DNA of 64,000 nucleotides, from NCBI RefSeq assembly GCF_030684315.1, contig NC_081396.1:4712001-4776000 (forward strand), in the 5' to 3' direction. The notes below the pieces were generated by a model that was not told the DNA's origin, searched no databases, and saw only the letters and a program-made list of their open reading frames with translations. How positions within the stretch are numbered: the stretch's first letter is position 1; every line of letters begins with the position of its first letter. Positions 8,250 through 62,269 of this stretch are shown here, piece after piece. The DNA comes from Stegostoma tigrinum. Taxonomy: Eukaryota. A program made the translations under genes and the position numbers.

Positions 8250-10040
8250 TAGAAGAAGAATTCATCGGCTGTGTGTGCAACAGATTCCTGGAACAATAGG
8301 ATATGGATCCAGCCTAGAATCTTAATATGATTGATCTGATAATGTGCAATGAAGCAGGCATAATAAATGATGGCAGACTCAAAGATTTGATTGTATCAAC
8401 AAAATTTAACATTCAGTTTGAGAGACAGAATTTATGTGTTGGAAGCAAGATTATATAGGAGTAATTTCAAAGAAATGAGGGCCGTGTTGCTGGAATGGAC
8501 TTGGAAACGATCTTTGCAGCAAAGATATATGAAGAAGAAGGGCAGAATCTTCAGAAAAATATTTCATAGTTCACTACAAAGATATAACCCAGTGAGAAGG
8601 AAGGATTATAGGAAGGAGACAAGTTATTGTGGATGATGAGGGAAGTTAAAGACAGCAAAAAATTAAATTTAAAAAAAAAATGACAAGTGATAAGTATTGT
8701 TGGTAAGAAGAGTATTTGGGAATTTTAGAGAACGATCAAAAGGCAAACAGAAGTTAATGATGCAGGAGAAGGTACACATTTTAAGCAAAGTTGCAGATAA
8801 TTTTAAAAGGAACGGAAGATGCTTCCTTAAATGAACAGAAATGAAAAGAAGGGCCAATTTGAACAAAGGACCCACTTCAGTGAAGTTGGGAAAGAACGTT
8901 TGGGAACCAAAATGAGGCTGATGAGTTTAATAAGTAGTGTGCGTATGCATTCACAGCAACATTCCAAAAATACTAAACACAGAAGAGCGAAAAACAAACG
9001 AAGAATACAATATAACAAGTTTCACGGAGACAAAGGGCAGCGAAATTAATAGGCCTAAATATGATTAAGTGTACGACAACTGATGAGATCCAATTGAGGA
9101 TAGAAAAATAAATAACAACAGAAGTGTTAAATGTATTGGTTTTAACTTTGCAATGAGCATTAAATTTCGGAAAAGACACAGAAGATTGCATAAAACCTTA
9201 ATTAAAATAAAATGTACAGCAAAATAAGAGGTGACTGGGGTCATTTTGTTTAACATCAATTACTGAACAAATGGTGTCGTCCACCATAAAGAATACTACA
9301 ACAGAGCGTTTAAAAAGTACATGGCATAATCAAGAAGACTGGAAATACTTTTATGAAAGCGAAGTCTTGCCTGATAAATCACGTGGAATCATTTGATAGC
9401 ATAAGAGTACAAAATAAGGAGGGATCACTGCTCGTAACATGCTGAGATTTTCCGAAGGCATTGTACAAGGCGCCACATGAAAGAAAGCTTCATTAGATAA
9501 GAGGCCGTGGCTTCGGAGGTAGTGCATTAGCGTGGACAGGGGATTGGTGAAATCAAAGTAGAAAGACTTCTGGATGAATAGATTTGTTTGACAGGATGTC
9601 AACCTCTAAGTAATGTAGCATCACATGAATCAGTATAGAGTGCACAAATATTTGAAATAAACAATAATGAATCAGACGTGAAAGCTCAACGCACTGTCGG
9701 TAACAAACAAAACAAAAAAAAAGCAGAAAAGTTCAAGATTGAGTTTGACACAAAAAGTTTGCTGAGGGATACAGACAGGACAAGAAAGTCAGCAAAATGA
9801 ACTTGGCATATTAATGCAAAGTTAATGAAATAATTGAGAATAGATGGAATGAGCGAGGTTATGCAGCTGACAGCAAATATTGAGTAGCTGCATCTGATAT
9901 AAATTAAAAAATTCAGAAATCAACATGAGTGGTTTGGGAGTCCTATTCCTTGAATCTTAAAAAATCTCACTTTTAATTTCGCTATTAATAAGGAAAGCAA
10001 ACTTGGTGTTGTGCTTTATTCCATATCTAATGTAACATTG
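8250..10040 (+). mobile_element. Old CR1 LINE ORF2 remnant
   Basis: Degenerate endonuclease-to-RT sequence; fragments such as SNFKEMRAVL; decayed 'SCLINH' and 'ALYKAPH' motifs at ~9360-9480. Confidence 0.55.
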
Positions 10041-10329
10041 ACAATAGGAACAATTAGATTGAACACATAGTTGTCTCGGATGATGTTTTTCACGGGACAA
10101 GATTCATCTTTAAGGACCATTGGGATCTCGTCAGTGGGAAAAATGACTTGTGCCAGATGAAAGAGTTCCACGCAAATTGGAAGAGGACCAATATCTTTCA
10201 AGGGAAACGTGCTAACGTGACCTCGGAGGCTTTATATTGGTAAGGGGCATGGCATTGCATTGTGGAACCAAAGCAAGGTTCAAAAAAAGAGTAAGGCTGT
10301 GAACAATACAGTAGGTAATGTGAGCAAGT

Positions 10330-12705
10330 TTAACAGACATTGCTGGCAAGGGTTTGACAGAGCCGAGATAAGACCAATAAATTAACCTGTATTTATTTGA
10401 AAGCAAAATGCCTGACACGTCATGCAGATGAACTTCGGGCATGGTTGCAAGCATGGGATAGGTATATCATAGTTATTAGAAATACTTGCCTCAGAGATGG
10501 ACAGGACTGGCAGCTTCATATTCCAAGGATATGGCTTTCGGAGGGACAGAAAGGAAAGCAAGAATGAAGGTGGAGTGGAGCTTTTGGTTTTGGAGAACAA
10601 TACAGCTGTACAAAGTGAAGATATTGCTGGGAGACAGTCCGGTGAACTCTTGTGTGTCGAACTTCAAAACGCGAAAGGGCTGATCACCTTGTTGGGTTTT
10701 TATGACAGTCCTCCAGCAGTTTGTGGGAAAACAAGCAAAATATGTCAGTGAATTTCAGATATCTGTAACAGAAGTTTGATCATGGTACAGGGTTTTAACT
10801 TTCCAAACTTGGAATGGGGCTGTCACACAGTTGAGAGTTTGGATGTGGAGAAGTTTGAAATTTGACACAAGAAAACTTTCGTAATCAATATTTGTTTGTA
10901 ACGACAACAGAAGGAATTTTGTTTGATGTTCTGTTTGTAAATAAGGAAAGGCAAGTGACTGAGGTCTTTGTGGAGGTGTACTGTGGGACAAGTGGACATA
11001 ATTCTAATAGTTTTGAAATAGTTAGCATAAATGATAGAACTGTTCAAAACTTAAAGTTCTGAGCTGGAGGGAGGCCAATTTTGATGGCATGGGACAGCGG
11101 CTTTGAAAAAATTGATTGAGAGAAGAATTGCACGCTTAAAGCAACGACTGTGAGTGGGAGGCCTTTAGGAATGCAACAACTAGTGTTCAGATTTGGGAAG
11201 TTCTTAATTGTGTAAAGGCCAAGTCTGTTATGGTTTACAGTGCAGAGAGTGCTTCATGACTAGAGAAATAAGGGCTCTGGTCAACTAAAAGAAGGGGATT
11301 TGAGATATGGGCAACTGGGATCAGGTGTATCTCCATAAGAGCATTATGAAAGCCGGAGTATACTTGAGAGGCCTCTTGGGAGTGCAAAGGGGGGCATGAG
11401 ATAGTTTGGCAAATGGGGTTAAGGAGCATCTAAAGCGACGATGTGTTGACATTTGGGCAAAACAATGACTCGGAAGAAAGTAGGGACATTTGAAGATCAA
11501 CGTGCCCTCTGTGAGTTGAACTATAGGAGATGGGTGAGATTCGAAATTAATATTCTGTATTGGGGTTTACTGTGGAGCGGGCCGTGGAAATGAGGGAACC
11601 TGGAGAAATTCATTGCGATGTCCTGAAAAAAGTACCTGTTACAGAAGAGGAGGTGCTGCTGTTCTGAAAACATGAAAAAAACCAATAACTATCCAGGAAA
11701 TGATAAGATGTTCCACAGTACTTTTTGTAAAGATGGGGAAGAGATTTCTCTGCCGCTACGGAGATATTTGAGCCATTTATAGCCACAGGAAGGGGCAGAA
11801 AGCCTGGAGGTTGGCTCACCCAGAGCTATAAATTTAAAAGGAAATGCTCTTTGGAAAAAGCCTTGGAACTATCGGCTGGTGAGACTCATGACAGTGATGG
11901 ATGAATGTTTGGATTCTGAGGGAAAGGATTTACATGCATCCTGAAAAGGAGGAACTGCTTCGAGATACTCAGTCTGAAATTTGTGTGGAAAATGTTGCCT
12001 CACAATATTGAATCAGTTTATTGAGGAAATTACCAAAAAACATTAATGGGGCAGATGTGTAGATTTTGTTTACTCAGAATTTCATCAAGGCTTTGACACT
12101 TTTCTGGTTGGTCGATGAATTAATAATGATACGGATTCAGGATCAGTTTGCCAAAGAGATTCAAAATTGGCTTAATAACAAGAGACAAAGTTGGTACGGA
12201 AGGGTTGTCTTTTGGACGTCTGTTATCAGTGCTGCCTCACGTGGATCGCTGGAGGATCTGCTTTTATTCGTCATTTATTTCAAAGACTTTGATGAGAATA
12301 CAGAAGGCAGAATTAGTATGTTTACCGAAGACACCAAAATTAGTGTTATAGTCATCAGTGAAGAAATTTATTCAAGAGTTTAAAAAAACTTGATTGATTG
12401 GGTCAGTGGGCTGCGGAGTAGCAGAAGGACTGGAAATAGATAATTGTGAGGTACTGTGTTTTTGTTGAAACAACGAAAGATATGTCTTTTAATGTGAAAC
12501 TTGGCCTTTGTTCAGTGTTTTAGAACAGAGAGAGCTTTTTTTATAAGTTTGTTTCTCATGTTGAAAGAATGGTTAAGAAAGCGTTTAGTATGCATGCCTT
12601 CACTTCTCAGACTGCTGAGTATTGGAGTTGCAAAACCATATTGAGTTTTTATGGAAGTTTGGTCAGGCCTATTCTGCAGGATTGTATCCAGTTCTGGATT
12701 ATTAT
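10330..12705 (+). mobile_element. Old CR1 LINE ORF2 remnant
   Basis: Fragments FQGYGFRRDRK..GGV, VELQNAKGLITLLGFY, IQNWLNNKRQ, LLLFVIYFKDFDE..SMFTEDTKI and LVRPILQDCIQFW occur in CR1 ORF2 order. Confidence 0.72.
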
Positions 12706-12949
12706 TCAATATATCACTGTTTATTTCCGCAAGTTCTCTGCCTTATATAGTATTCTCCAAGTAAATAATGACGGGAAATGTTTGTTTATTGTCTGACCCA
12801 TCAGCTGTGGTTCCACACATAGGTGGCCTTGCTGATCTTTAAGGGGTCCGATTATCTCCCCAGTTAATCCGCTGTCCTGAAAGTATTTGAAGAATCACTC
12901 TGTAATCTCGTTAATCATGTTTGCCAAAATTATATTTTGTCCTGCTTCT

Positions 12950-14580
12950 GAAGAGGTGAATGTCGGGAGGGGTTGAACAGACTTAAGCTTTTATCACTCG
13001 AGGGTCAAGTTTGAAAGGTGATATTTTTGAAATTTTCAATGTCATTACGTGTTGTGATAGGGTGAGTATAAGGTACATTGGTGTGTTTCAAGACTAAGTT
13101 GCAGATAATTAAAGTTAGAGGACGAAGATTGAGAAATGACACAAAGGCATTTTTTTTACGGAGAGAGTCGTTCGTTGGTGGAATGAACTTCCACAGGAAG
13201 TGATGGATATAAGTACAGTGACAACATTTAGAAGCATTTGAATGAGAACGCGAGTAAGAAATGTTTTGCGGGATATTGGCCAAGTGTGTGTTTGTAATTA
13301 GATTGTGATTATGGTCATCATGGACTGATTGGCCTGTCAAATCATGTTCTGTGCTGTCAGGTGAAGAAGACATTTGGCACATTTGCCTTCATTGGCCACA
13401 ACATTGAGTGTAGAAGTTGTGATGTCATGTTGCGGCTCTGCAGGACATTCATGAGCCCACTTTTGGAATACTGCACACAATGTTGGTCGTCCTGATGTCA
13501 GAAGAACTTTTTTCAACTTGTGACAGTGGAAGGAAGATTCACAAGGATGGTGCTGCAAATGGAGTCTTATAGCCTTCGGCAGGGGCAGCTTAGGCTTTTT
13601 CCGACAGCATCGGAGGCTGTTAGGTGAACTTGTTGAGATTTATAAAATCGTGAGGGGCTTTGATCGTTTGAATACCCAAGATTTTATTTTGGCGAGTGTA
13701 AGTACAAAACTAGAGATCATAGGATGAAGATGAAAGAGGAAATATTTACAAACGAACTGATGGTCCATTTTTGTTTCAGGCAGAAGATGCCTTGTGTGTG
13801 GAAGGGGCTCCCAGAGGAAGTGGTGTAGGCGTGTGGAATTACAACAGTTAAAACAAATCTGGATGGACATACGGCCAGGAAGTGTTCAGAGCAATGTGGG
13901 CCAAATGTTTACAAGTGGAACTAAGTTACATTGGCATCACGAGTTGATGCAGATTAGTCAGATTGAAAGGTTTTCTAAGTACAGTGTGATCGGATGAAAC
14001 TGCACACTTTGTTTAAACTGCATAAGCACTCGTCATACAATAGCTGAAAAGCTGTGAACTGTTTTATGCCTCTTATTGAAGGGAAGACACAATGGAGTGC
14101 GAGATAATCTGCATTCGTTTCAGTCGACTGATCCCAATGATGCAGGGATTGTTTTGTGAGTGAAGTTTGAATATTTCAGTGCCTGTTCTAAATGGAATGT
14201 AAAATATTCAACGGTAACACATTGGAAGATAGGTTATGTTTTGGAAAATTTGTGGTTTCAGAAATGTCATTTCCGTTTGTGAAAAAGTTTAGGAGCAAAC
14301 GGTGTGATCCCTGAATTGTAGACCACAAATTTAAGGCAAAAGATAATTCCTTCTCCCAAAATGAAATGAATCTGTTGGATTCTTTTTTACAGAAGACAGT
14401 GAAGGTTGGCTTCTTATGTATTTTCAAAGGCTAAAAGGACTGATTTTGAATCGGTAATGGAATCAACACACGTGAAGGCAAGTGTGAAAAGTGGAGTTCA
14501 GGACTAAATGTTCAAACACGATGTCATTGAACGGAAGAGCAAACTCCATCGTCCGAATAATTACTTCTTGTTCCACTTCT
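12950..14580 (+). mobile_element. Three consecutive decayed CR1 3'-end fragments
   Basis: Repeated CR1 C-terminal and 3'UTR signatures at ~12950-13340, ~13350-13990 and ~14040-14580. Confidence 0.55.
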
Positions 14581-15199
14581 TCTGACATTACAAATGACAC
14601 TGGCTCTAAGTTGCTCACGTTAGAATTATTATATCTCCTGAGTTTCATGTTTGACATAACAACCCAGTCCCTTCACATTCCCTTTCTTGTGAAAAAGGCG
14701 ACCATAACACCACCTACTGAAATCCTCTCTCCATCTATGGTGTGATTGCATCCTTTCTGTCGTGCAATAATTGTACCGATATACAATTACTGTTGTTGAA
14801 TATTTTTCAAACAAATCAAAATAAACAGGGAAGGTTAAAGACAGATCAAAATCTCATAAACTACCACATCACACACACCATTGACCTTCAGGCGTTGAAT
14901 AAGCACATATTACACATATCACTTGTTATGTAGCTCTACACATACACAAGACAGAAGTCTAAAATGCAAGAGTTTAATGTGGGAATTTGTCCTTGTTGAT
15001 TCAGATATCAAACATTGCAAAATCACGAAGACAATGGTAGTAGTTGAAGACTTATTTACACTGTCCTATCAGATCCTGTCAGTGATTGCACAGATCACAG
15101 TATGTTCAAAATAAATATTCCTCCGCATTGTTCAAACAACATGATCATGTCGAATACACTGTGATTTATATGCAGAGTAGAACTGCGTCCACCATTCCC

Positions 15200-16130: not shown

Positions 16131-18035
16131 ACATAGAACAGAGAACATAGAACAGTACAGCACAGAACAGGCCATTCAGCCCACGCTGTTGTGCCGACCA
16201 TTGATCCTTATGTATAGAGCCTCAAATTTCTGTGACCATATGCATGTCCAGCAGTCTCTTAAATGTCCCCAATGACCTTGTTTCCACAACTGCTGCTGGC
16301 AACGCATTCCATGTTCTCACTACTCTCTGTGTATAGAACCCGCCTCTGACATCCCCTCTATACTTTCCTCCAACCAGCTTAAAACTATAACCCCTCGTGC
16401 TAGCCATTTCTGCCCTGGGAAATAGTCTCTGGCTATCAACTCTATCTATGCCTCTCATTATTTTGTCTACCTCACTTAGGTCACCTCTCCTCCTCCTTTT
16501 CTCCAATGAAAAATGTCCGAGCTCAGCCAACCTCTTTTCATAAGATCTGCCCTCCAGTCCAGACAGCATCCTGGTAAACATCCTCTGAACCCTCCCCAAA
16601 GCATCCACATCTTTCCTATAATAGGGCAACCAGAACTGGACGCAGTATTCCAAGTGCGGTCTGACCAAAGTTTTATAGAGCGCAACAAGGTCTCACGATT
16701 CTTAAACTCAATCCCCCTGTTAATGAAAGCCAAAACACCATATGCGTTCTTAACAACCCTGTCCACTTGAGTGGCCATTTTAAGGGACTTATGTATCTGC
16801 GCACCAAGATCCCTCTGTTCCTCCACACTGCCAAGAATCCTATCCTTATTTCTGTACTCAGCTTTCAAATTCGACCTTCCAAAATGCATCACATCGCACT
16901 TATCCAGGTTGAAATCCATCTGCCACCTCTCAGCCCATCTCTGCATCCTGTCAATGTCCCGCTGCAGCCTACAACAGCCCTCTATACTGTCAACGACACC
17001 TCCAACCTTTGTGTCGTCTGCAAACTTGCTGACCCATCCTTCAACCCTCTCATCCAAGTCATTAATAAAAATTACAAAACGTAGAGGACCAATGACAGAG
17101 CCCTGTGCAACACCACTCACCACTGACATCCAGGCAGAATATTTTCGTTCTACTACCACTCGCTGCCTTCTGCTGGCCAGCCAATTCTGTATCCAGACAG
17201 CTAAGTTCCCCTGCATCCCATTCCTCGTGACCTTCTGAATGAGCCTACCATGGGGAACCTTATCAAATGCCTTGCTGAAGTCCATCTTCACCAAATCCAC
17301 TGCTCGACCCTCATCAACTTTTCTAGTCACATCCTCAAAGAACTCGATAAGGTTTGTGAGGCATGCCTGCCCGTCACAAAGCCATGTTGATTGCATTTAA
17401 TCAAGCCATGCTCTTCCAGATGGTCATAAATCCTATCCCTCAGAATCCTTTCTGACACCTTGCAGAAGACAGGCGTGAGACTTATGGGTCTGTAATTGCC
17501 AGGGATTTCCCTATTTCCTTTCTTGAAGAGAGGAATTACATTTGCCTCTCTCCAGTCATCAAGTACGACTCCAGTGGAGAGCGAGGATGCAAAGATCTTC
17601 GCAAGTGGCGAAGCAATTGCATTTCTCATTTCGCAAAGTAGCCGAGGACAAATCTGGTGCCGCACGGCGACTTGTCAACCTTAATGTTTGACAATTTTTT
17701 CAGCACATCAGCTTGCTCTATCTCTATCCATTCCAGCATGCACACCTGCTCTTCAAAGGTTTCATTCACTACAAAGTTCGTTTCTTTCATAAAGACAGAA
17801 GCAAAAAACTCATTTCGGGCTTCCCCTACGTCCTCAGACTCCACACACCGGTTCCCGATGCTATCCCTGATCGGCCCTACTCTTTCTTTGACCATTCTCT
17901 TATTCCTCACATAAGTGTAAAATGCCTTTGTGTTCTCCCGAAGCCGTTTTGCCAAGCCTTTCTCGTGCCCCCGCCTGGCTCTCCTCAGACCTTTTTTGAG
18001 CTCCTTCCTCGCCTGCCTGTAATCCTCCAGAGCTG
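16131..18035 (-). mobile_element. Young 5'-truncated CR1 LINE (shark HER1-like), ORF2 reverse transcriptase region, frameshifted
   Basis: Overlapping minus ORFs 17626-17955, 17327-17665, 16476-17396 and 16222-16668 carry NYRPISLT, DFSKAFDKVPH, GVAQGSVIGP, KFADD and VRPHLEYCVQFW. 3' tail of CTATGTT-like repeats at ~16131-16160. Confidence 0.93.
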
Positions 18036-27916: not shown

Positions 27917-28142
27917 NNNNNNNNNNNNNNNNNNNNNNNNNNNNNNNNNNNNNNNNNNNNNNNNNNNNNNNNNNNNNNNNNNNNNNNNNNNNNNNNNNNN
28001 NNNNNNNNNNNNNNNNNNNNNNNNNNNNNNNNNNNNNNNNNNNNNNNNNNNNNNNNNNNNNNNNNNNNNNNNNNNNNNNNNNNNNNNNNNNNNNNNNNNN
28101 NNNNNNNNNNNNNNNNNNNNNNNNNNNNNNNNNNNNNNNNNN
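27917..28142. other. Assembly gap
   Basis: Run of N. Confidence 1.
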
Positions 28143-43752: not shown

Positions 43753-44011
43753 NNNNNNNNNNNNNNNNNNNNNNNNNNNNNNNNNNNNNNNNNNNNNNNN
43801 NNNNNNNNNNNNNNNNNNNNNNNNNNNNNNNNNNNNNNNNNNNNNNNNNNNNNNNNNNNNNNNNNNNNNNNNNNNNNNNNNNNNNNNNNNNNNNNNNNNN
43901 NNNNNNNNNNNNNNNNNNNNNNNNNNNNNNNNNNNNNNNNNNNNNNNNNNNNNNNNNNNNNNNNNNNNNNNNNNNNNNNNNNNNNNNNNNNNNNNNNNNN
44001 NNNNNNNNNNN
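43753..44011. other. Assembly gap
   Basis: Run of N. Confidence 1.
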
Positions 44012-45819: not shown

Positions 45820-46124
45820 GTGTCCAGTCGGAGGTTACATTGGTTCAACCACAGGCAGAGACTGTCCGTCCTGGAGGCGCCATAAGACTGTCCTGTAAAA
45901 CCAGCGGATTCGATCTTGGCAGCTCTGGCATGAGTTGGATCCGACAGGTGCCTGGCAAGGGGCTGGAGTGGATCGTTTACTACTATAGTTCATCGTACAG
46001 TAATTATGCGCCAGCGATTAGAGACCGATTTACTGCGTCCAAAGATATTTCAAAAAACATCTTCGCGTTGGAAATGATGAGCCTGAGGATCGAAGACACT
46101 GCCATCTATTACTGTGCAAGAGAC
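45820..46124 (+). CDS. IGHV: IgM VH gene segment exon, germline and unrearranged
   Basis: Acceptor AG at 45818-45819 after a T-rich tract. Open frame (C)[101 protein letters not shown] with canonical Cys, WIRQ, GLEW and DTAIYYCAR. Followed immediately by an RSS. Confidence 0.97.
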
Positions 46125-46163
46125 CACAAAGCGAGAAACAGCGGCTGGACAACTACAAAAACA
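46125..46163 (+). other. VH 3' recombination signal sequence (23-bp spacer)
   Basis: Heptamer CACAAAG 46125-46131, 23-nt spacer, nonamer ACAAAAACA 46155-46163. Confidence 0.9.
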
Positions 46164-46510
46164 GCTCGAAGAGAATCTTTGTACATTCCAAAGTAAAATG
46201 ACGATTAGTACATGGTTTTCACGACTGTATTGTAAAGTAGACCTCAAACTGCTTCTGACAACACAATCGCAAAGGAAATGAGCCATTCAAACGAACAAAC
46301 CAATCAATAAAACAGGGAAATGTTTCGGACATGTCTGAAAGCTCCATTACTTAAAGAGTTGGACACAATGTTAAATTTAATATATCTGACGCTTCAATAA
46401 ATCTCGGTCAATTGTTTTATGTAAACGATAGCATTAATTCCACAATGATCAGTACTAAATATCTATTTCACATCAAAATTGAGAGAGAATTTTGAACAGA
46501 GATTAAGCGC

Positions 46511-47351: not shown

Positions 47352-47399
47352 TCTACTTTGCTGACTGGGGACAAGGAACCATGGTGACCGTGAATTTAG
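47352..47399 (+). CDS. IGHJ: IgH joining segment JH (YFADWGQGTMVTVNL + phase-1 G)
   Basis: Canonical WGQGT motif. Donor GTAAGA at 47400. Phase matches the Cmu1 acceptor (G|TG = Val). Confidence 0.96.
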
Positions 47400-48970
47400 G
47401 TAAGAAATTTGAATGTTCTCAGCAACCGGTATATTTGTTTTACTGACTTAAGTAATTCATGAGTTAAATGAAACTCGGATTCTGGGATGTGTTTAGTTTG
47501 GTTCCAATTGACTTTTCTGCAAAGTGATGATAAGCTACATTTAAGTCTCAGCAAATAAATAAAGTGCTGGTGAGGGATTCAGTTACTCAGGGTTTCTCTC
47601 ATTTTCATTAAACAGTGAAACTGTCTCTTCAATTCTATGACGTTGAGACAATGTTTAATGCCATTGACGCCCAATATCTTCGAGATAGTATCCACAACAG
47701 ACGTTCAGAATTTGAAGATGTTAAAATATTCCCAAGCATGAACAAAATGTGCTAAAATATTATTAACAATTTCTTGATAATATTCCACGTGCAAAATTCT
47801 GATCTTGTCGTGGCTGCATTTTGTGGTGTAGTATGTTATTTTAGTTGATGACAAGTACGTTCATATCTGTATTGAATTTTCCTTGCCGTGCCCCAGTTCA
47901 CTCTGTTGATTTCAGTTGAGCAGTTTGATTAACACAAAGGATTTTCCATCATTTCAATCGATTGATTCAAACTGTTTGGATTCTGAGTTTGTTTTACTTG
48001 ACACTGTTGAATTTTTTTGCTTTCATTCTGAATTTGTTTCATTTGATTTTGTTGAATTCAGTTGATTGAATTCTGTTTCTCTGTTGAGGAGACTGTCCAT
48101 ATGCATTACTTTTAATTATTAATATTGTTTGAAGTTCTTTGCTTTCACTGCATCGTTTCTGCACTTGCTGAACTCAATTGGCGACATTCAGCTTACTGAT
48201 TGATTTAAAACATTATATCCGTTTGCAATTGTCTGAATAACTGACTTAATGCAGAAACACAAAAGATTTGAGGATTAAAACAAAAATGCAGCATTTTCGT
48301 GCATTGTTTTGATTTAAAGTCAATTGTAGTAATAAAGTAAGTTAAGTCTGATCTTACCATCCTCAATCAAAATACAATTTGGTTCCAACATCTCAAAATG
48401 CCGAAATGATTAGCCTTCATGACTGATTGTAAAGTTATTATTAGTACAATTATAACGCGGTAATAGGTGGACATTGACCTAATTTTGTTTCTAACTGAAA
48501 GTGATTAATCAATGTATGCATCTGATCGGTCTACTGTAAAGTGCTCGCAATTGGCATGAACGGGAAGGAAATACAGATTGGAATAAATTGAATGTCTGCT
48601 AAAAGCGTGCTCAAATTTGTATCTTGTTAAGTTAGTCAACTTTCAATTAAGCCTGCTGTTTTGACTTCTCATTTCAATATAATTTACTAATTAGCGTGTT
48701 TGATGGTGCGCAGCTTTCATGGATTCTAGTTTGAGATTTCATTCACGATGTTACAGTTCTGATGAAAATGCGTGCAGAGTCAATTCAGCTGCAAACACAT
48801 TCCTGTCCCTCACTGTTGTGATTTGGTGATTTCTGCTCTCTTGAGAAGATAATTCGTCCGGGGGTATCAAAGTTCTGACATTTGTGAAGCGGTTTCTGGT
48901 CTCGACAACGTTTTACCATTGTTTACATGATTGGTGACAGTAAAACGGTCGAGTTTTCTCATTGAATGCA

Positions 48971-49320
48971 AACAAAATGCAAGTTTGCTCGCTGAGTGAA
49001 AAGGATGGTTTTCAGACGTTTCATCACCATTCTAGGTAACATCATCAGTGAGCCTCCGACGGGCTTCGTCGAAGGCTCACTGATGATGTTACCTAGAATG
49101 GTGACGAAACGTCTGAAGGCTTCGTCGGAGGCTCACTGATGATGTTACCTATAATGGTGACGAAACTTCTGAAGGCTTCATCGGAGGCTCACTGATGATG
49201 TTACCTAGAATGGTGACAAAACGTCTGAAAACTAAGCTTCCAGCTCAGCGAGCAAACTCACATCCCGAACCTCAACCTGAGCTACAAATCTTCTCAAAAC
49301 TCGCCAACAAAATGCGAGTT
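48971..49320. mobile_element. Penelope-derived fold-back (pLTR) element with three tandem 56-bp units and 15-bp target-site duplication
   Basis: Direct repeats AACAAAATGC(A/G)AGTT at 48971-48985 and 49306-49320. Left arm 48982-49060 is an inverted copy of the right part. 56-bp units start at 49062, 49118 and 49174. Confidence 0.82.
49062..49241 (+). ncRNA. Tandem minimal type I hammerhead ribozyme motifs (three copies)
   Basis: Each unit reads CTGATGA-T-GTTACC-loop-GGTGAC-GAAAC-GTC (core, stem II, core, cleavage triplet). CTGATGA at 49080, 49136 and 49192. Copy 1 intact, copy 2 has GAAAC-TTC, copy 3 has AAAAC-GTC. Activity untested. Confidence 0.72.
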
Positions 49321-50870
49321 GAAGTTTCCTGAGGCCTATTATTAGGAGAAAGGCAGACGGCAATGGTTTGGAAACTGAGGAGAAACAGATAACCTAAGGA
49401 ACAATGATTACTTTGATGTCAGTGTGGCTGATTAAATATAAACGATGACTTGCAATCAACTCTTTCGATCACAGGATCTTTCATTATATAATTCAAAAGT
49501 CACCGAGGAATACGAATCGAATTTCAAAATTTTAATGTTCCAATCTTGGTTGTGAGCAACAAAAACCGTAACGGTGATCAAGAATCAGCTCCCCACTCCG
49601 TCATGTATTCCAAACATATTTTCTGGATCGGAAAGTTAATTGGCAAAGGATAATTAGCAATTCTTCTGAAATACTGAGATGAAGAACAGACCTATTTCAA
49701 TGCTTTGAACAGTTTTACAAATAACTGATATTATTTAATCGTTATATCCCTGATTCAACAAGATTTGTAGGAATAAAAACAAAACTTTAACTGAGTGATT
49801 TCATCTGCACAGCTGTCTACTTTTTCCGAATCCATGTAGTTAAAATGTACCCAGTTGTAACTTACAACGTCATGTCAACTCAAGGGTCACTCATTCAGAT
49901 TCAACTGATGTCGTGGATTATATGACCAAGGCTAGAGTTTGTATTAATTACACTTATCCAAGCATGAACGCATCATGTGAAAGCTTGAGCAAATGCATAA
50001 AATGCCTTGTATATCAATGTGTTGAGACATGTGCAGAGTTTACTATTTTCCGGAAGCAATAAGTACAGAGTGTGAGAACACATTGCTTATTTCAAACAGT
50101 AAAATTGAACGTTATTTCCTTCAATTAATGTACTAGAGAAATTGTTGCAACTTAGCCATCTGAAGGATATTGTTCGCATTAGTTGAATGCAATTATCATT
50201 TATTTAGAGAGCAGGTAAAGTGGGCAACTCCCAGCAGAAACACCTTTTAAATTCATACATTTTTTTTAAAAAAACGTATCCTTCACTGAAAAGCAGCTCA
50301 TCAGACAATTAACTCGGCATTGCGAAACGAACCTAACAGCAAATATTTTTTCTTCGTTTTTCAACAGAAATTGTTTTCCACAATATAACGCAATTTGTTT
50401 CTGTGCAGTGTGTGCAAAATCTCCAAATTTAAAGAACTGTGTCAAGAAAATACGAAATTAATTTCGATAATTAATCATTTCCTCTTGACTTTTGCTTAAA
50501 TTAGTCAAATGTCCCGTCTCAATAATTTGGTTTATCATAATGTCTTATGAAATGTATTGAAGGAGTAGGTAATCTCTATTCAATGTGAAAGCATTCCCTT
50601 TCCTGTTAATACTTATCTGCGGACCAGTTTCTTTTAACAAAGTTAAATTAGAGTTAATCTGTAATATTTGACATGGATTAAATAGATTTATTAACGAGGT
50701 TCAAAACTGTTGGATGGTTTGTGCATGTGCTATTTCTGACCAACTTGATAAGTGGCCTTAACCTTTGTCAATCTTCTGGTTTGGTCTCCAGTAACTGAAG
50801 CAATTCGTTTTCATCTGGTGCTTCAAAACTTCTTTTATCTGCCATTAATATCATATTTACTTGGCCCCTC

Positions 50871-51615: not shown

Positions 51616-53667
51616 ATATGTTATTCCATAGTAGCTCCTCAACAGTTTGTCTGATTCAAGAGGACTATCAAAGTGCATTTAATTAATTTGTGAAATATTA
51701 TTTCTACCGTGAAATGACTCTACAACTATTCGTGGTTGCTGAAAGGTGTTAATAGTTAACATGGTTTGTGTACTGTCAAACAGTTGGTCTGTATTGTCCT
51801 CGTTAGTGTCGAGCTGATGGTATTCTGCTGCCTTGTGGTGTGGAGGTGGTGTCCCTGAGTTTGAGATATGTGGCCCGTGTTCAATTCCAAACTGTTGCAG
51901 TGGTACATAATGCCATCTAAATAACAATTTAAATTGGAAATTAAAAACACTTCGATTTCTTTGAGTGTTGACGGAATTCCAAAAACAGATGCCTGCTTCA
52001 ATCGCTGACTTACACAGTAGATGGAATTTGGGTGGGGAGGGGGAATGGGGGTGATAGTTTTATATTAAATAAAAACAATGTTTGGCCATGGGATTTGAGC
52101 GTCACGAGTGGGGTTAATTCAGTTCTGCCCCACAGAAATACCAGCTTCCGGCTTGCTCTTCTATCAACAGCATTAGTAAGAATCCCACTGTTAATGGTCT
52201 CAAAGAATACTTGAGGTGATAATATTGAGCTTATCTTAATTTTATTCAATCGAGCATTCTATCTGAACAGGAGAGTTAGATTGTTCAGGAGGATAAGGTT
52301 TCCACTGTATCCATCACTTGCAGCGAATAGTCGCAGATATTCAGTTAATCTTCAGATTATGCCTCAGTTCGTCCAGTACCTTTCCTTCGAACACTTTTTT
52401 TACAGCAGAAACCATGTTAACACATTCAGAGTCGAACCCAGTCGGTGTGAGTTCCCATGCCAGGAAAAAATGAAAACGTTTTGCTGAAGCAAGGTGTACT
52501 GGGCTCGAAAGTGTATCTTTTTGTTCTCTCTTTAGGAGCTGCGGGAACTGCTGAGTTTCATCAGCAATTTGCTATCTTCATTTTGTTTCAGATGTCGAGC
52601 ATTTTTGTTTCTTTTTCAAGAAAAAATTCTCTGTTGTCAGTGAAACGGTGTAAGTTGTTCACAGAGAAAATATGACAATAAACTAAGCATTTTCAGTGAT
52701 ATTTCATATCTGATAATCATTGAATTTAAGTAACCTAATCGGGAACCGTAGTTTCAGAAGAAATATTGTCAAAAAATAGCAGAGGTTGGCGGCTGCTATA
52801 ATTGTGCAGAAGTTATTTTGACCACTTAAATGGGGAATGTCGATGCTTCTATTCCAAATAATCAACGAGAATTTTTTTTTAACAAAATGTTTTCAAGCAT
52901 TGTTTTGCTGAATATTTTTCGCAAAGATTCTGACTGCCAGTGACAACCTGACATTTGGCACAATGATAGGAGGATAGTGACAGACGTAGGGCAAACAAAC
53001 TCTCAAACACGTCCACTATTTAATCAAATCTTGTTGGACTTGTGTCCAAACTCCATGTGCCTGCATTTTGCCAAAAAAATTAACATTTGATCATCAAAGA
53101 AAATCCATCCAAAACTTATTGATTAGATTGCATTTAACAAAGTGTCGCGCCATTTCTGAATGACATTTCTCTGATTATTTAATTTTCCATAATGAGGCTC
53201 TGTTGAATTGCTTATGAGAAGAAACTTTAAATTTCTGACAATTTCCGATTTTAACATCACAGTCAAGTTCGTCAGAATATTTTAATTAAACATTGTATTT
53301 ATATATTACTGGCAAGAGTACTGTATGGTTACAAGGCCAGAAATGAGGAAACATTCATTCCCATTAAAGAATGAAGAAACTATTCTGTTCCTTCAGTAAA
53401 AACATGGTGAAACCACACAGAAGGAAACCGACTAGCGTGTCATCCTTGAATGGGCGTTCAACAAGTCCCTCAAATTCGTTTCAGTCCTGACAATGGGTAT
53501 TTCTGTCTCTCGAGAGATGGGCAAGTGTCAGAACTCTTACATCTCCTTGAGAAGTTTGAAGTCAACAGCCTACACAGAATTGCTACTCTTGATATGACAA
53601 CAGTCTGTCTGCAGCATTTTAGAAAGCGAGGTCAATAATTGTGATCCTGAAATAGGAAATGTCAGAG

Positions 53668-54114
53668 AAATAATTGCAAGCGAGTTATGAGAAGATTTGT
53701 AGTTCAGGTTGAGGTCCTGGATGTAAGTTTGCTCGCTGAGCTAGAAGTTTCGTTTTCAGACGTTTCGTCACCATTCTAGGCAACATCATCAGTGAGCCTC
53801 CGGTGAAGCACTGGTGTTATGTCCCGCATTCTATTTCTGTGTTGAAGTTTCGTTGGTTTGGTGATGTGATGTCCGGTGTTGATGTCATTTCCTGTGTTGG
53901 TAAAGAACAGGAAATGACATCACCAACACAGGAGATGGCACCAACACAGGAAATTACGTCACCAACTCAAGGAAGCCGAAACACACAAATAGAAAGTGGG
54001 ACATCACACCAGCGCTTCACTGGAGCCTCAGTGATGTGACCAAGAATGGTGACGAATCATCTGAAACCGAAACTTCCAGCACAGCAAGCAAATTTACATA
54101 CAAATATTTGCAAG
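53668..54114. mobile_element. Second Penelope-derived inverted-repeat element (same family as 48971-49320)
   Basis: Arms inverted about ~53900. Minus-strand hammerhead motif 53759-53792, decayed plus-strand copy ~54025-54065. Internal ACAGGAAATGACATCACCAAC-type repeats. Flanking direct repeats AAATA(A/T)TTGCAAG at 53668-53680 and 54102-54114. Confidence 0.78.
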
Positions 54115-57862: not shown

Positions 57863-58049
57863 NNNNNNNNNNNNNNNNNNNNNNNNNNNNNNNNNNNNNN
57901 NNNNNNNNNNNNNNNNNNNNNNNNNNNNNNNNNNNNNNNNNNNNNNNNNNNNNNNNNNNNNNNNNNNNNNNNNNNNNNNNNNNNNNNNNNNNNNNNNNNN
58001 NNNNNNNNNNNNNNNNNNNNNNNNNNNNNNNNNNNNNNNNNNNNNNNNN
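57863..58049. other. Assembly gap in the J-C intron
   Basis: Run of N. Confidence 1.
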
Positions 58050-58690: not shown

Positions 58691-58732
58691 ATTAACAGAG
58701 TCTAACTTGCTTAATCCGACATTCTTTCCCAG

Positions 58733-59029
58733 TGACTCCATCTTCCCCGACGCTTTATGGTCTAGTCTCCTGTCGTGAACACAGCACTGATAACTCTGTG
58801 ATTTTTGGTTGTTTGGCGATGGACTATTCCCCCGACGTCACTACTGTGACCTGGAAGAAAGATGGGACGCAGATCACGACTGGATTTAAGACATACCCAT
58901 CGGTGAGAAACAAGAAGGGAACTTATACCCTGAGCAGCCAGTTAGCACTGACTGGTGCAGACGCGCATTGTGGAAAAGTCTACTGTGAGGTTCGACACAG
59001 TGGGTCCGACAAGAGCACTGAAATACAAT
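58733..59029 (+). CDS. IGHM: IgM constant domain 1 exon (Cmu1)
   Basis: Acceptor ttctttcccAG ending 58732. 297-nt phase 1-1 exon: (V)TPSSPTLYGLVSC...VIFGCLAMDYSPD...TWKK...TYPSVRNKKGTYTLSSQLAL...YCEVRHSGSDKSTEIQ. C1-set motifs characteristic of shark mu CH1. Donor GTAAGT at 59030. Confidence 0.96.
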
Positions 59030-59099
59030 GTAAGTATTGTGGGAAAGTGGTAGACAGATATGTGTGCTTTACGCAAATATGGTCTTATTCATAACACTT

Positions 59100-61762: not shown

Positions 61763-62077
61763 GTCCAAACGGTGGTGTCCCTCCGAGTGTTCTCCTTACT
61801 GTGAGTTCCAGTGAAGAAATCGAGAGCAGGAAAGTTGCAACCTTAGTCTGCTCAATCTTTCACTTCAATAAAAAGGATATCTCCGTGGTTTGGTTGAAGA
61901 ATGGAAGAGTGGTAAATTCTGGTGTCTTTACTTCTCCTGCGTGTGAAGCGAACGGAAACTTCTCAACGACCAGTCAGCTGAGAGTGTCTTCTCGTGAATG
62001 GTTCGACAGAGCAGTCTACACATGCCAGGTCGAACATGAAGGGCACAGTCAAAGTCACAACATCACCGGACCTCAGG
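61763..62077 (+). CDS. IGHM: IgM constant domain 2 exon (Cmu2)
   Basis: Acceptor tgttttcttaAG ending 61762. 315-nt phase 1-1 exon: (C)PNGGVPPSVLLTVSSSEEIESRKVATLVCSI...VWLKNG...NGNFSTTSQLRV...EWFDRAVYTCQVEH...NITGPQ. Donor GTAAGA at 62078. N-glycosylation sequons NFS and NIT. Confidence 0.95.
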
Positions 62078-62269
62078 GTAAGAGATGCATTCCGACAGAA
62101 ATGATACTAATTGTGACCGCTGATGCAAAACAAAACACTTAATTTATCAAGCGGTGTGAAAAGCATGAAACAAGTTCGAATTGAGATCATGCAGTGTGTA
62201 ACTCAATTCATTGTGAGTTTTACGGAAGCATTGTTCATAATTCAAATCAGAGAAAGGTGCTTCCCTCTA

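What the first reader, a model, noticed from the sequence alone, without database searches (positions are those of the whole stretch)
48971..49320. Tandem array of sense-strand hammerhead ribozyme motifs inside the IgM J-C intron
Seen: about 1.6 kb after JH, a ~320-bp insertion between 15-bp direct repeats holds three 56-bp units. Each has CTGATGA + stem II (GTTACC/GGTGAC) + GAAAC + GTC on the transcribed strand, and there is one inverted copy at 49011-49060. Established: Penelope-like elements carry minimal type I hammerheads lacking stem III, which are thought to cleave as tandem dimers through the ACGU palindrome. Inference: every IgM pre-mRNA from this cluster contains potentially self-cleaving RNA, which could affect co-transcriptional splicing, transcript level or release of unit-length RNAs. 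The motif class is known; its tandem amplification within an Ig locus is what is unusual. It may equally be neutral TE debris.
Basis: partly seen in the sequence, partly recalled or inferred. Interest (0 to 1): 0.8.

Follow-up and report, generated by a model that had tools for sequence, protein, structure and literature searches.

The report
Decayed Penelope retroelement fragment in Ig intron
The three hammerhead-like repeats are real, but they are the worn remains of a very common shark jumping gene (a Penelope-like element) that landed in an antibody gene intron, and they most likely no longer cut RNA.

Summary
The sequence features are real. A 319-bp insertion (48986-49304) lies between 16/18-matching direct repeats, about 1.6 kb after JH. 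It holds three 56-bp tandem units and one inverted copy.

Only unit 1 keeps every core base. Unit 2 has lost the ACGU palindrome, and unit 3 has A in place of the catalytic G12.

The anatomy matches a 5'-truncated, head-to-head Penelope-like element (PLE) insertion. It has the minimal hammerhead of PLEs, an adjacent inverted truncated copy, and a 39-nt "tail" at one end only. Contigs from three species show a very high-copy family with the same two alternative 3' ends in AT-rich sites.

A second insertion of the family lies in the same intron in the opposite orientation (53681-54096).

Predicted folding puts one sense unit into a ~50-bp duplex with the antisense arm. Catalytic folds cost +11 to +19 kcal/mol. 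Published PLE hammerheads cleave poorly even when intact.

No RNA run was available, so cleavage was not tested, and the triplication was not independently verified. The IgM isotype is plausible but unproven.

Unchecked scan notes report similar tandem or foldback hammerhead fragments in other introns of this genome, including another JH-CH1 intron.

Verdict: ordinary transposable-element debris of a known kind.

The parts
47352..47399 (+). JH segment. The coding end is followed by the GTAAG splice donor, which marks the start of the J-C intron.
   Evidence: The WGQGTMVTV motif is at 47366-47392. The boundaries are my reading of the sequence.
48968..48985 (.). Left copy of the target-site duplication.
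   Evidence: Direct repeat family D3, 16 of 18 identical to 49303-49320.
48986..49061 (-). Inverted, 5'-truncated arm of the PLE insertion. It lacks the tail and carries a hammerhead motif on the - strand at 49048->49015, where the stem II closing pair is G:U.
   Evidence: Inverted pairs I1-I3, pattern match at 49015-49048 (-) with 1 mismatch, alignments A1 and A2.
49062..49117 (+). Tandem unit 1. It has all core bases present (CTGATGA, U bulge, 6-bp stem II, GAAA, ACGT). The GUC cleavage site is after C49113.
   Evidence: (0 mismatches).
49118..49173 (+). Tandem unit 2. The core boxes are intact, but the helix III palindrome reads ACTT (G16.2 changed to T). There is also a change in loop II.
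   Evidence: (2 mismatches).
49174..49229 (+). Tandem unit 3. The catalytic G12 is replaced by A (49218, a CpG-type transition). The GUC site is after C49225.
   Evidence: 1 mismatch; fails the descriptor. Family-wide A/G split at 49218, table 3.
49230..49265 (+). Element sequence between the hammerhead and the proximal (tail-less) 3' end of the family.
   Evidence: 145 contigs of run X2 leave the stretch after 49265 into unrelated AT-rich DNA (table 7). The inverted arm ends within about 7 nt of the equivalent point.
49266..49304 (+). 39-nt PLE 'tail', present only on the direct arm. The element's distal 3' end is ...AACTCGC.
   Evidence: Contigs leave the stretch after 49304 in all four runs: 108 (X1), 170 (X2), 242 (X5) and 262 (X12) (table 7). 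Copy B ends with the same letters.
49303..49320 (.). Right copy of the target-site duplication. The first 2 nt overlap the element end, so the true TSD is 14-18 bp.
   Evidence: family D3.
53681..54096 (-). Second insertion of the same family (copy B) in the same intron, in the opposite orientation. It is a head-to-head foldback. It has one full hammerhead motif at 53792->53759 (-) and a decayed inverted one. The tail is on one arm only, and it has an 18-bp TSD (15 of 18 identical).
   Evidence: (D4, I1, I2).
58732..59094 (+). ORF containing the first constant-domain exon (CH1-like, C1-set). It marks the end of the roughly 11.3-kb J-C intron.
   Evidence: Pfam C1-set E=6e-15. Aligns to CH1 of solved heavy chains.

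Best explanation
This is an old, 5'-truncated, head-to-head insertion of a very high-copy Penelope-like retroelement (PLE) in the J-C intron of a shark Ig heavy-chain cluster.

Inferred origin (from the PLE literature): the PLE enzyme cut both target strands and primed reverse transcription on each. One cDNA started at the distal start site, giving the direct arm with its 39-nt tail. The other started at the proximal site, giving the inverted arm without a tail. The staggered cuts gave the 14-18-bp target-site duplication.

The 56-bp segment holding the PLE's minimal type I hammerhead was copied three times. This happened either by template switching during reverse transcription or by later slippage or unequal exchange next to the palindrome centre. 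Which of these applies is not settled.

Shown: since insertion the copies have decayed, partly at the two CpGs that lie inside the catalytic core. One sense unit of three still has a complete core.

Inferred: in the Ig pre-mRNA the element folds into a long hairpin (antisense arm paired with a sense unit). The remaining units fold into inactive extended hairpins. The whole element is removed with the intron and has no effect of its own on expression.
For: Motif class. Four features are met that Cervera & de la Pena 2014 list as not imposed by their search descriptor (PMC4209133): a nucleotide between A9 and G10.1, the G10.1-C11.1 pair, a long helix II (6 bp), and a palindromic 15.1-16.1 ACGU.

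PLE insertion anatomy, as described in PMC8557442. All of the following are seen in both copy A and copy B:
- strong 5' truncation;
- an adjacent inverted 5'-truncated copy;
- a 30-40-bp tail at one end only.

Family-level evidence from contigs of 4 runs, covering 3 organisms:
- 9,236 to 14,719 contigs were laid on the stretch.
- Summed word depth is 1e4-3e6 inside 48961-49317, against 10-170 in the flanks for X1 and X2.
- The family has two alternative 3' ends, at 49265 and 49304, 39 nt apart, each followed by unrelated AT-rich DNA. This matches the two reverse-transcription start sites and the AT-rich targets reported for the Anolis Poseidon element (PMC11167929).

Geometry like that Anolis element:
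- An ATG formed by A9-U-G10.1 opens a frame that runs to the 3' end in copy A.
- The cut site lies about 27 nt after that ATG.
- The 3' ends fall 68 and 107 nt into the frame. The published element has its cut site 26 bp after the ATG and start sites at 111-118.

Decay. Unit 2 has lost the palindrome, unit 3 has G12 changed to A, and the inverted arm has C11.1 changed to T. The last two are the two strand versions of decay at one CpG.

Age:
- The TSD copies differ at 2 of 18 positions and the arms are 87-96% complementary.
- Contigs 93-95% identical to the right flank begin inside the tail (records 7, 21, 22). Diverged paralogous or allelic copies of the locus therefore share at least the 3' junction.

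Folding:
- The antisense arm pairs with unit 3 with P=0.998.
- Helix III pair probabilities are below 1e-6.
- Catalytic folds cost +10.7 to +18.8 kcal/mol.

Literature. PLE minimal hammerheads show low activity in vitro even as dimers. The Anolis PLE hammerhead needed the PLE protein, and no reads ended at its cut site in vivo.
Against:
- The 35-aa peptide found only one weak hit (E=3e-4). That hit is itself a dubious 210-aa model holding the peptide twice.
- Nearest-neighbour folding ignores tertiary contacts, co-transcriptional kinetics and proteins.
- Unit 1 is fully intact and unit 2's core is intact. A double hammerhead with a 3-of-4-bp helix III (core 2 acting on site 1 or site 3) is not chemically excluded.
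- No RNA run was available, so absence of cleavage in vivo is inferred, not shown.
- Retention of the insertion in diverged copies of the locus is also what conservation would look like, though it is equally expected for a neutral insertion that predates duplication.
Confidence: 0.85

Rival explanations
1. Residual ribozyme activity. A double hammerhead forms between neighbouring units: the core of unit 2 acts on the GUC of unit 1, or on the GUC of unit 3. It cleaves a fraction of the Ig pre-mRNA co-transcriptionally and lowers or modulates splicing of this cluster's transcripts.
For: - Unit 1 has a complete motif, unit 2 a complete core, and unit 3 an intact GUC site.
- 3 of the 4 helix III pairs are possible for pairs 1-2 and 2-3, and all 4 for pair 1-3.
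- A distal stem I pairing (GGAGGCU with AGCUUCC) forms in the predicted ground state of 49118-49260.
- The insertion is retained in diverged copies of the locus.
Against: - Competent folds cost +10.7 to +18.8 kcal/mol.
- Helix III probability is below 1e-6 in the full transcript, and unit 3 is in a duplex with the antisense arm at P=0.998.
- Even perfect PLE minimal hammerheads cleave weakly and mostly at non-physiological Mg2+.
- The Anolis PLE hammerhead needs its own protein.
- The mutations are those expected from neutral decay.
- Copy B in the same intron is in the opposite orientation, so there is no sign of orientation selection.
Confidence: 0.04
2. The three units are a small retrozyme-like array. 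This would be a non-autonomous, PLE-derived 56-nt hammerhead repeat that spreads or is expressed as unit-length linear or circular RNA, rather than a by-product of one PLE insertion.
For: - A 2026 preprint reports vertebrate non-LTR retrozyme consensus lengths of 51-972 bp and derives retrozymes from PLE pLTRs.
- Axolotl PLEs are said to carry minimal hammerheads in tandem (the supplement figure was not seen).
- All three units start at the same template position with an extra G not present in canonical copies. That is what repeated copying of one short template would give.
- Unchecked scan notes list other tandem minimal hammerheads in introns of this genome.
Against: - The array sits inside a typical PLE foldback with PLE flanks on both sides and one TSD.
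- Most family contigs leave the stretch upstream of each unit start into a shared different sequence, in 110-149 contigs per run at 49175. The canonical element therefore has one hammerhead (table 7).
- The repeat junction lies 4 nt past the cleavage site, not at it.
- Minimal hammerheads lack the loop-loop contacts of the retrozyme hammerheads that circularise efficiently.
- There are only 3 units, and 2 are damaged.
Confidence: 0.05
3. The unit count (three) is an assembly error, and the real locus holds one or two units.
For: - No listed contig spans the array.
- PLE tandem/inverted structures are known to trouble assemblies (PMC8557442 passage).
- An unchecked scan note describes a two-unit version in another JH-CH1 intron 358 kb upstream.
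Against: - Each unit carries its own private substitutions (1, 2 and 2 over 51-56 nt). That is not what a collapsed or duplicated read artefact gives.
- A 168-bp array is short for current long reads.
- The head-to-head junction at 49060-49063 is covered at low, few-copy depth in X1 and X2 (table 3).
Confidence: 0.05

Closest known systems
Minimal type I hammerhead motifs (min-HHR) of metazoan Penelope-like elements (Cervera & de la Pena 2014, PMC4209133)
   Same: CUGAUGA and GAAA boxes, an unpaired nucleotide between A9 and G10.1, a G10.1-C11.1 pair, a long helix II (6 bp), and a short, poorly defined helix I. There is no helix III beyond the palindromic A15.1-C-G-U16.1. Copies occur widely as single truncated copies and as pairs on opposite strands 100-700 bp apart.
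   Different: Here three units lie head to tail at a 56-bp period inside one insertion. Two of the three are damaged at core or palindrome positions. Self-cleavage was not tested.
Poseidon-clade PLE of Anolis carolinensis (PAc; PMC11167929)
   Same: [quoted passage not shown] Genomic copies have two alternative 3' ends 30-40 nt apart (the 'tail') inside the first ~110 nt of the ORF. Targets are AT-rich. Both target strands are cleaved and extended, which explains inverted arms.
   Different: No RT/GIY-YIG ORF of the shark family was recovered here. The 3' ends lie 68 and 107 nt into the frame, against 111-118 for the published site. The clade assignment was not tested.
Non-LTR retrozymes of animals (PMC7229834; bioRxiv 10.64898/2026.07.22.740005)
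   Same: Tandem repeats with one type I hammerhead per unit, related to PLE pLTRs. The unit length of 56 bp is inside the reported 51-972 bp range. About 42-44% of Xenopus copies overlap introns.
   Different: Retrozyme hammerheads are mostly canonical, with loop-loop contacts, and are expressed as circRNAs. This array has minimal hammerheads, only three units, and PLE flanks with a single TSD. There is no expression evidence.
Conserved intronic hammerheads of amniotes (HH9 in RECK, HH10 in CTCL; review PMC6155905)
   Same: A type I hammerhead-like motif on the sense strand of an intron, probably of retroelement origin.
   Different: Those are single, stable, ultraconserved ribozymes. No Rfam hammerhead model (the library is said to hold all curated families) matches here, even at E<=10. 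The units here are decaying.

Membership tests
PLE minimal hammerhead (min-HHR) | Conserved core boxes C3-A9 (CUGAUGA) and G12-A14 (GAAA) | tested here: inconclusive
   Met in unit 1, unit 2, the inverted arm and copy B. Not met in unit 3, which has AAAA with A at G12.
PLE minimal hammerhead (min-HHR) | Unpaired nucleotide between A9 and G10.1, a G10.1-C11.1 closing pair, and a long helix II | tested here: met
   U bulge and 6-bp stem II (GUUACC/GGUGAC) in all three units. The inverted arm has G:U at the closing pair.
PLE minimal hammerhead (min-HHR) | Palindromic 15.1-16.1 (ACGU) that allows a dimeric helix III, followed by an NUH cleavage triplet | tested here: inconclusive
   ACGUC in units 1 and 3, ACUUC in unit 2. 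Adjacent pairs can form only 3 of 4 pairs. The non-adjacent pair 1-3 can form 4 of 4.
PLE minimal hammerhead (min-HHR) | Self-cleavage at C17 | not testable with these tools
   No RNA run was listed. Predicted competent folds are 10.7-18.8 kcal/mol above the ground state.
Rfam hammerhead families (type I, type III, HH9, HH10; family names recalled) | Match to the covariance model | tested here: not met
   0 matches at gathering score in the whole window. No hammerhead family among the 11 matches at E<=10 on 48900-49400. This is expected for motifs without helix III.
Penelope-like element insertion | 5' truncation with an adjacent inverted 5'-truncated copy | tested here: met
   Copy A: arms 48977-49059 / 49181-49263. 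Copy B: arms 53718-53788 / 54032-54102 and 53787-53901 / 53922-54036. Feature as described in PMC8557442.
Penelope-like element insertion | 30-40-bp 'tail' at one end only, equal to the distance between two reverse-transcription start sites | tested here: met
   The direct arm runs 39-45 nt beyond the inverted arm's end. Family contigs end at 49265 and at 49304 (table 7).
Penelope-like element insertion | Target-site duplication and AT-rich target | tested here: met
   TSD 16 of 18 identical (copy A) and 15 of 18 (copy B). The consensus of flanks beyond 49304 is AT-rich with agreement ~0.4 in 4 runs.
Penelope-like element insertion | Family master copy encodes a PLE-type RT with a GIY-YIG endonuclease | not tested
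   No full-length copy is in the window (BLAST). Unchecked scan notes report GIY-YIG PLEs with hammerheads elsewhere in this genome.
Non-LTR retrozyme | Tandem units each bounded by an active hammerhead, expressed as unit-length linear or circular RNA | tested here: inconclusive
   Tandem units are present, but only 1 of 3 is intact and the array is embedded in a PLE foldback. Expression was not testable.

The most novel reading that the evidence does not exclude
A composite double hammerhead still cuts a fraction of the heavy-chain pre-mRNA. The intact core of unit 2 would act on the GUC of unit 1 or unit 3, perhaps helped by a PLE protein or host chaperone. The foldback has been kept in several diverged Ig clusters because this cutting, or the dsRNA hairpin, tunes their expression. 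A milder variant is that the array is a frozen record of PLE reverse transcriptase copying one short template three times, which would be a first step from a PLE end to a retrozyme.
Probability: 0.04. Interest if true: 0.6.

Novelty: new member of a known kind. Interest (0 to 1): 0.15.

Why it matters
The main value is for annotation. Shark introns are full of Penelope-like fragments that carry hammerhead-looking motifs, and a motif match alone should not be read as a working ribozyme in the host transcript.

Two small points may be useful:
- The insertion is shared by diverged copies of the Ig cluster. According to an unchecked note, the number of units differs between clusters. If so, it could serve as a marker for the order of Ig cluster duplications.
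- The family-level read pattern gives independent support in sharks for the internal-initiation model of PLE reverse transcription published for a lizard element. The pattern is two 3' ends 39 nt apart, with the ATG inside the hammerhead.

Tried and rejected
- Rfam covariance models: no hammerhead match at the gathering threshold or at E<=10. The only matches were chance hits of miRNA and snoRNA models to the inverted repeat.
- Linking the family to a PLE ORF failed. The 35-aa peptide read from the ATG inside the hammerhead gave a single hit among 1.84 billion representatives (E=3e-4). That hit, P0001, is a 210-aa model holding the peptide twice and is weak evidence at best.
- Translating copy B upstream of the hammerhead showed a TGA inside CTGATGA in one frame, but with stops upstream. 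This is inconclusive for the idea that the ORF stop overlaps the hammerhead.
- Isotype: the CH1 exon search returned 5 proteins at E<=1e-10 (of 7 candidates), none with an isotype name. PDB searches of the CH1 and CH2 exons were not decisive.
- RT ORF at 16.5-17.7 kb: I considered it as a possible PLE master and rejected it. It has RVT_1 only, no hammerhead nearby, and its PDB relatives are retron, group II and R2-type RTs.
- Empty site or orthologue in other species: runs X5 and X12 cover only the element, not the flanks (15 and 10 of 30 bins with any depth), so no empty site could be seen.
- Two of my pattern searches used a wrong spacing and returned 0. They are replaced by the script.
- Papers: Lunse, Weinberg & Breaker on PLE hammerhead dimers is not held and was seen only as a reference in PMC6765202.
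- Unseen supplements: those of PMC4209133 (in vitro assays, alignments) and PMC7229834 (Fig. S7C, tandem minimal hammerheads) could not be seen and may bear on how common 56-bp tandems are.
- No paper was found on hammerheads in shark Ig introns. One search with 'hammerhead ribozyme', IgM, shark and intron gave 1 unrelated paper. The search 'Penelope-like' plus shark gave 10 papers, none on Ig (listing only).
Full report
**What is there**

The region was read directly. Tandem Repeats Finder reports 49062-49229 as 3.0 copies of a 56-nt unit, with 93% matches and score 301. The repeat finder reports:
- the three units at 49062, 49118 and 49174;
- an inverted copy at 49011-49061 that is 96% complementary to unit 1;
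- a longer inverted pair, 48977-49059 / 49181-49263 (83 nt, 87%);
- a flanking direct repeat, 48968-48985 / 49303-49320, with 16 of 18 identical.

The insertion is therefore 48986-49304 (319 bp).

JH (…WGQGTMVTV…) lies at 47366-47392. By my reading, its coding end is at 47399, followed by GTAAG, 1.57-1.59 kb upstream. A V-set ORF (45840-46196) and two C1-set ORFs (58732-59094 and 61801-62142) are all on the + strand. The three units are therefore on the sense strand of an Ig heavy-chain J-C intron of about 11.3 kb.

The isotype is not settled:
- The CH1 exon finds shark heavy-chain-like proteins at 61-73% identity, none with an isotype name.
- The best solved relative of the CH2 exon is human mu, only just ahead of alpha and epsilon.

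**Is the motif real and complete?**

The motif is far above chance. A loose min-HHR descriptor of my own requires CTGATGA, an optional bulge, at least 4 bp of stem II, GAAA, up to 8 nt, then UH. It finds 4 hits in the window against a mean of 0.05 in 200 shuffles. The hits are unit 1, unit 2, the inverted arm (- strand) and a copy at 53792-53759 (-).

The state of each copy is as follows:

| Copy | State |
|---|---|
| Unit 1 | Only sense unit with every conserved position intact |
| Unit 2 | Reads GAAACTTC, so the ACGU palindrome that must form helix III in a dimer is broken |
| Unit 3 | Reads GACAAAAC, with A at catalytic G12; fails the descriptor |
| Inverted arm | T at C11.1 |

The unit 3 change and the inverted-arm change are the two strand versions of decay at the same CpG. 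The palindrome holds the core's second CpG.

Rfam finds no hammerhead family at gathering score or at E<=10 on 48900-49400. That is expected for motifs without helix III.

**What it is**

The motif has the features that Cervera & de la Pena list for minimal hammerheads of metazoan Penelope-like elements (PMC4209133, main text read):
- G10.1-C11.1;
- a long helix II and a short helix I;
- palindromic 15.2-16.2.

They also report pairs on opposite strands 100-700 bp apart.

The insertion anatomy matches the PLE signature described by Craig et al. (PMC8557442, passages): strong 5' truncation, an adjacent inverted 5'-truncated copy, and a 30-40-bp tail at one end only. In alignment A1 the inverted arm stops at …GAGCAAACTT, while the direct arm runs on for about 40 nt to …AACTCGC at 49304.

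A second insertion in the same intron, 53681-54096 on the - strand, has the same layout:
- head-to-head arms;
- the tail on one arm only;
- the same 3' end;
- an 18-bp TSD with 15 of 18 identical;
- a single full hammerhead.

BLAST of both copies against the window finds no third insertion.

**Family-level evidence from reads**

Logan contigs of four runs were laid on 48400-49900 at 85% likeness. Two runs are of organism A and one each of organisms B and C.

- Depth: flank bins have summed word depth 10-35 (X1) and 53-172 (X2). Bins inside 48961-49317 reach 1e4 to 3e6 in all four runs, with 9,236 to 14,719 contigs laid per run. This is a very high-copy family shared by three organisms.
- Distal 3' end: contigs leave the stretch into unrelated AT-rich DNA after 49304 (108, 170, 242 and 262 contigs in X1, X2, X5 and X12).
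- Proximal 3' end: in X2, contigs also leave after 49265 (145 contigs). The family therefore has two alternative 3' ends 39 nt apart.
- One hammerhead in the canonical element: contigs also leave upstream of each unit start (at 49175: 112, 127, 110 and 149 contigs). They run into a shared, different sequence (…GGGACATAACACCAG), the one that precedes the hammerhead in copy B. The tandem junction is therefore not the family norm.
- G12 position: at 49218, G makes up 76% and 49% of depth in X1 and X2 but only 12-14% in X5 and X12. The A variant is therefore widespread.
- Diverged copies of the locus: contigs 93-95% identical to the right flank begin inside the tail (records 7, 21, 22). Diverged paralogous or allelic copies of the locus share at least the 3' junction.
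- Limits: no listed contig spans the array, and runs X5 and X12 do not cover the flanks. Neither the triplication nor an empty site could be checked.

**Fit to the published PLE mechanism**

For the Anolis Poseidon element (PMC11167929, passages), the paper reports:
- the ORF starts at stem II of the hammerhead;
- the cut site is 26 bp after the start codon;
- reverse transcription starts at two adjacent internal sites, 111-118 nt into the ORF;
- the 30-40-nt tail is the stretch between those two sites;
- both target strands are cut and extended, and targets are AT-rich.

Here A9-U-G10.1 forms an ATG. The frame from the ATG of unit 3 stays open to the element's end. The cut site is about 27 nt after the ATG. 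The two family 3' ends lie 68 and 107 nt into the frame.

The peptide search gave only one weak hit (E=3e-4), to a 210-aa model holding the peptide twice.

**How the array arose**

Each of the four hammerhead copies in insertion A carries 1-2 private substitutions over 51-56 nt. They are therefore of similar age, at or soon after insertion.

All three units begin at the same position with a G that canonical copies do not have, and all end 4 nt past the cleavage site. The first unit abuts the palindrome centre.

This fits repeated copying of one template segment by template switching. It also fits later slippage next to a hairpin-prone centre. An unchecked scan note of a 273-bp version with one antisense and two sense motifs in another JH-CH1 intron 358 kb upstream would favour later change in unit number. 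I could not read that locus.

**Would it cut the Ig pre-mRNA?**

For the + strand RNA of 48960-49330:
- The predicted ground state (-181.9 kcal/mol) pairs the antisense arm with unit 3 and the tail, with 47 pairs and P=0.998.
- Units 1 and 2 each fold into an extended hairpin in which GAUG of the core pairs with CGUC of the cleavage site.
- Helix III pair probabilities are below 1e-6.

Forcing double-hammerhead folds costs +10.7 to +16.3 kcal/mol. Forcing single active sites costs +16.3 to +18.8 kcal/mol. Adjacent units can form only 3 of the 4 helix III pairs.

These are nearest-neighbour estimates. They ignore tertiary contacts, kinetics and proteins.

Published data point the same way:
- PLE minimal hammerheads cleave weakly even as dimers or trimers, mostly at non-physiological Mg2+.
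- The Anolis one needed PLE protein, and no RNA-seq reads ended at its site.

No RNA run was listed for this stretch, so nothing could be tested in vivo.

**Comparison and novelty**

The motif class, its PLE origin, inverted and tandem PLE structures, and retrozyme-like tandems down to 51 bp are all in print. About 42-44% of Xenopus retrozyme copies overlap introns.

Searches for hammerheads in shark Ig introns found nothing relevant. The scan's own unchecked notes list many PLE hammerheads and several tandem ones in other introns of this genome.

I rate this a new member of a known kind, of low interest. It is an ordinary decayed PLE fragment that happens to lie in an Ig intron.

Noticed in passing
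window 53681-54096 (-): A second head-to-head insertion of the same PLE family in the same J-C intron, in the opposite orientation. It is 416 bp, with a TSD at 53663-53680 / 54097-54114 (15 of 18 identical). It has one complete hammerhead motif at 53792-53759 (-) and a decayed inverted one.
   Followed up: yes
window 49218 (family-wide, table 3): At the catalytic G12 position, the family's contigs carry G in 76% and 49% of depth in the two runs of organism A, but in only 12-14% in organisms B and C. Most copies there have the inactivating A. This could be CpG decay of an old family or a master copy with a dead core.
   Followed up: partly
window 49265 and 49304 (table 7): The family has two alternative 3' ends 39 nt apart, each followed by unrelated AT-rich DNA. 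This is independent support in sharks for the two internal reverse-transcription start sites published for an Anolis PLE.
   Followed up: partly
window 49062, 49118, 49174: Each tandem unit begins with a G that canonical family copies do not have at that place (they have C or T). This may be a non-templated or cap-derived nucleotide marking a fixed 5' end of the template.
   Followed up: no
window 49281-49487 (table 8, records 6, 7, 20-22): Besides exact contigs, contigs 93-95% identical to the right flank start inside the element's tail. At least one or two diverged paralogous or allelic copies of this Ig intron therefore share the insertion's 3' junction.
   Followed up: partly
window 16476-17665 (-): Two adjacent ORFs (306 and 112 aa) with Pfam RVT_1 (E=1.3e-19 and 5.7e-06). 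The nearest solved relatives are retron, group II and R2-type reverse transcriptases. This is probably a LINE remnant and is not linked to the hammerhead family.
   Followed up: partly
protein P0001 (public representative, 210 aa): A database protein holds two diverged copies of the peptide encoded by the hammerhead and downstream region (MM.PRMVTKRLQ…ELPIF). It is probably a gene model called across two PLE fragments in another organism.
   Followed up: no
window 27917-28142, 43753-44011, 57863-58049: Three runs of N (226, 259 and 187 nt). The last lies inside the J-C intron, about 700 nt before the CH1 exon. They were left untouched.
   Followed up: no
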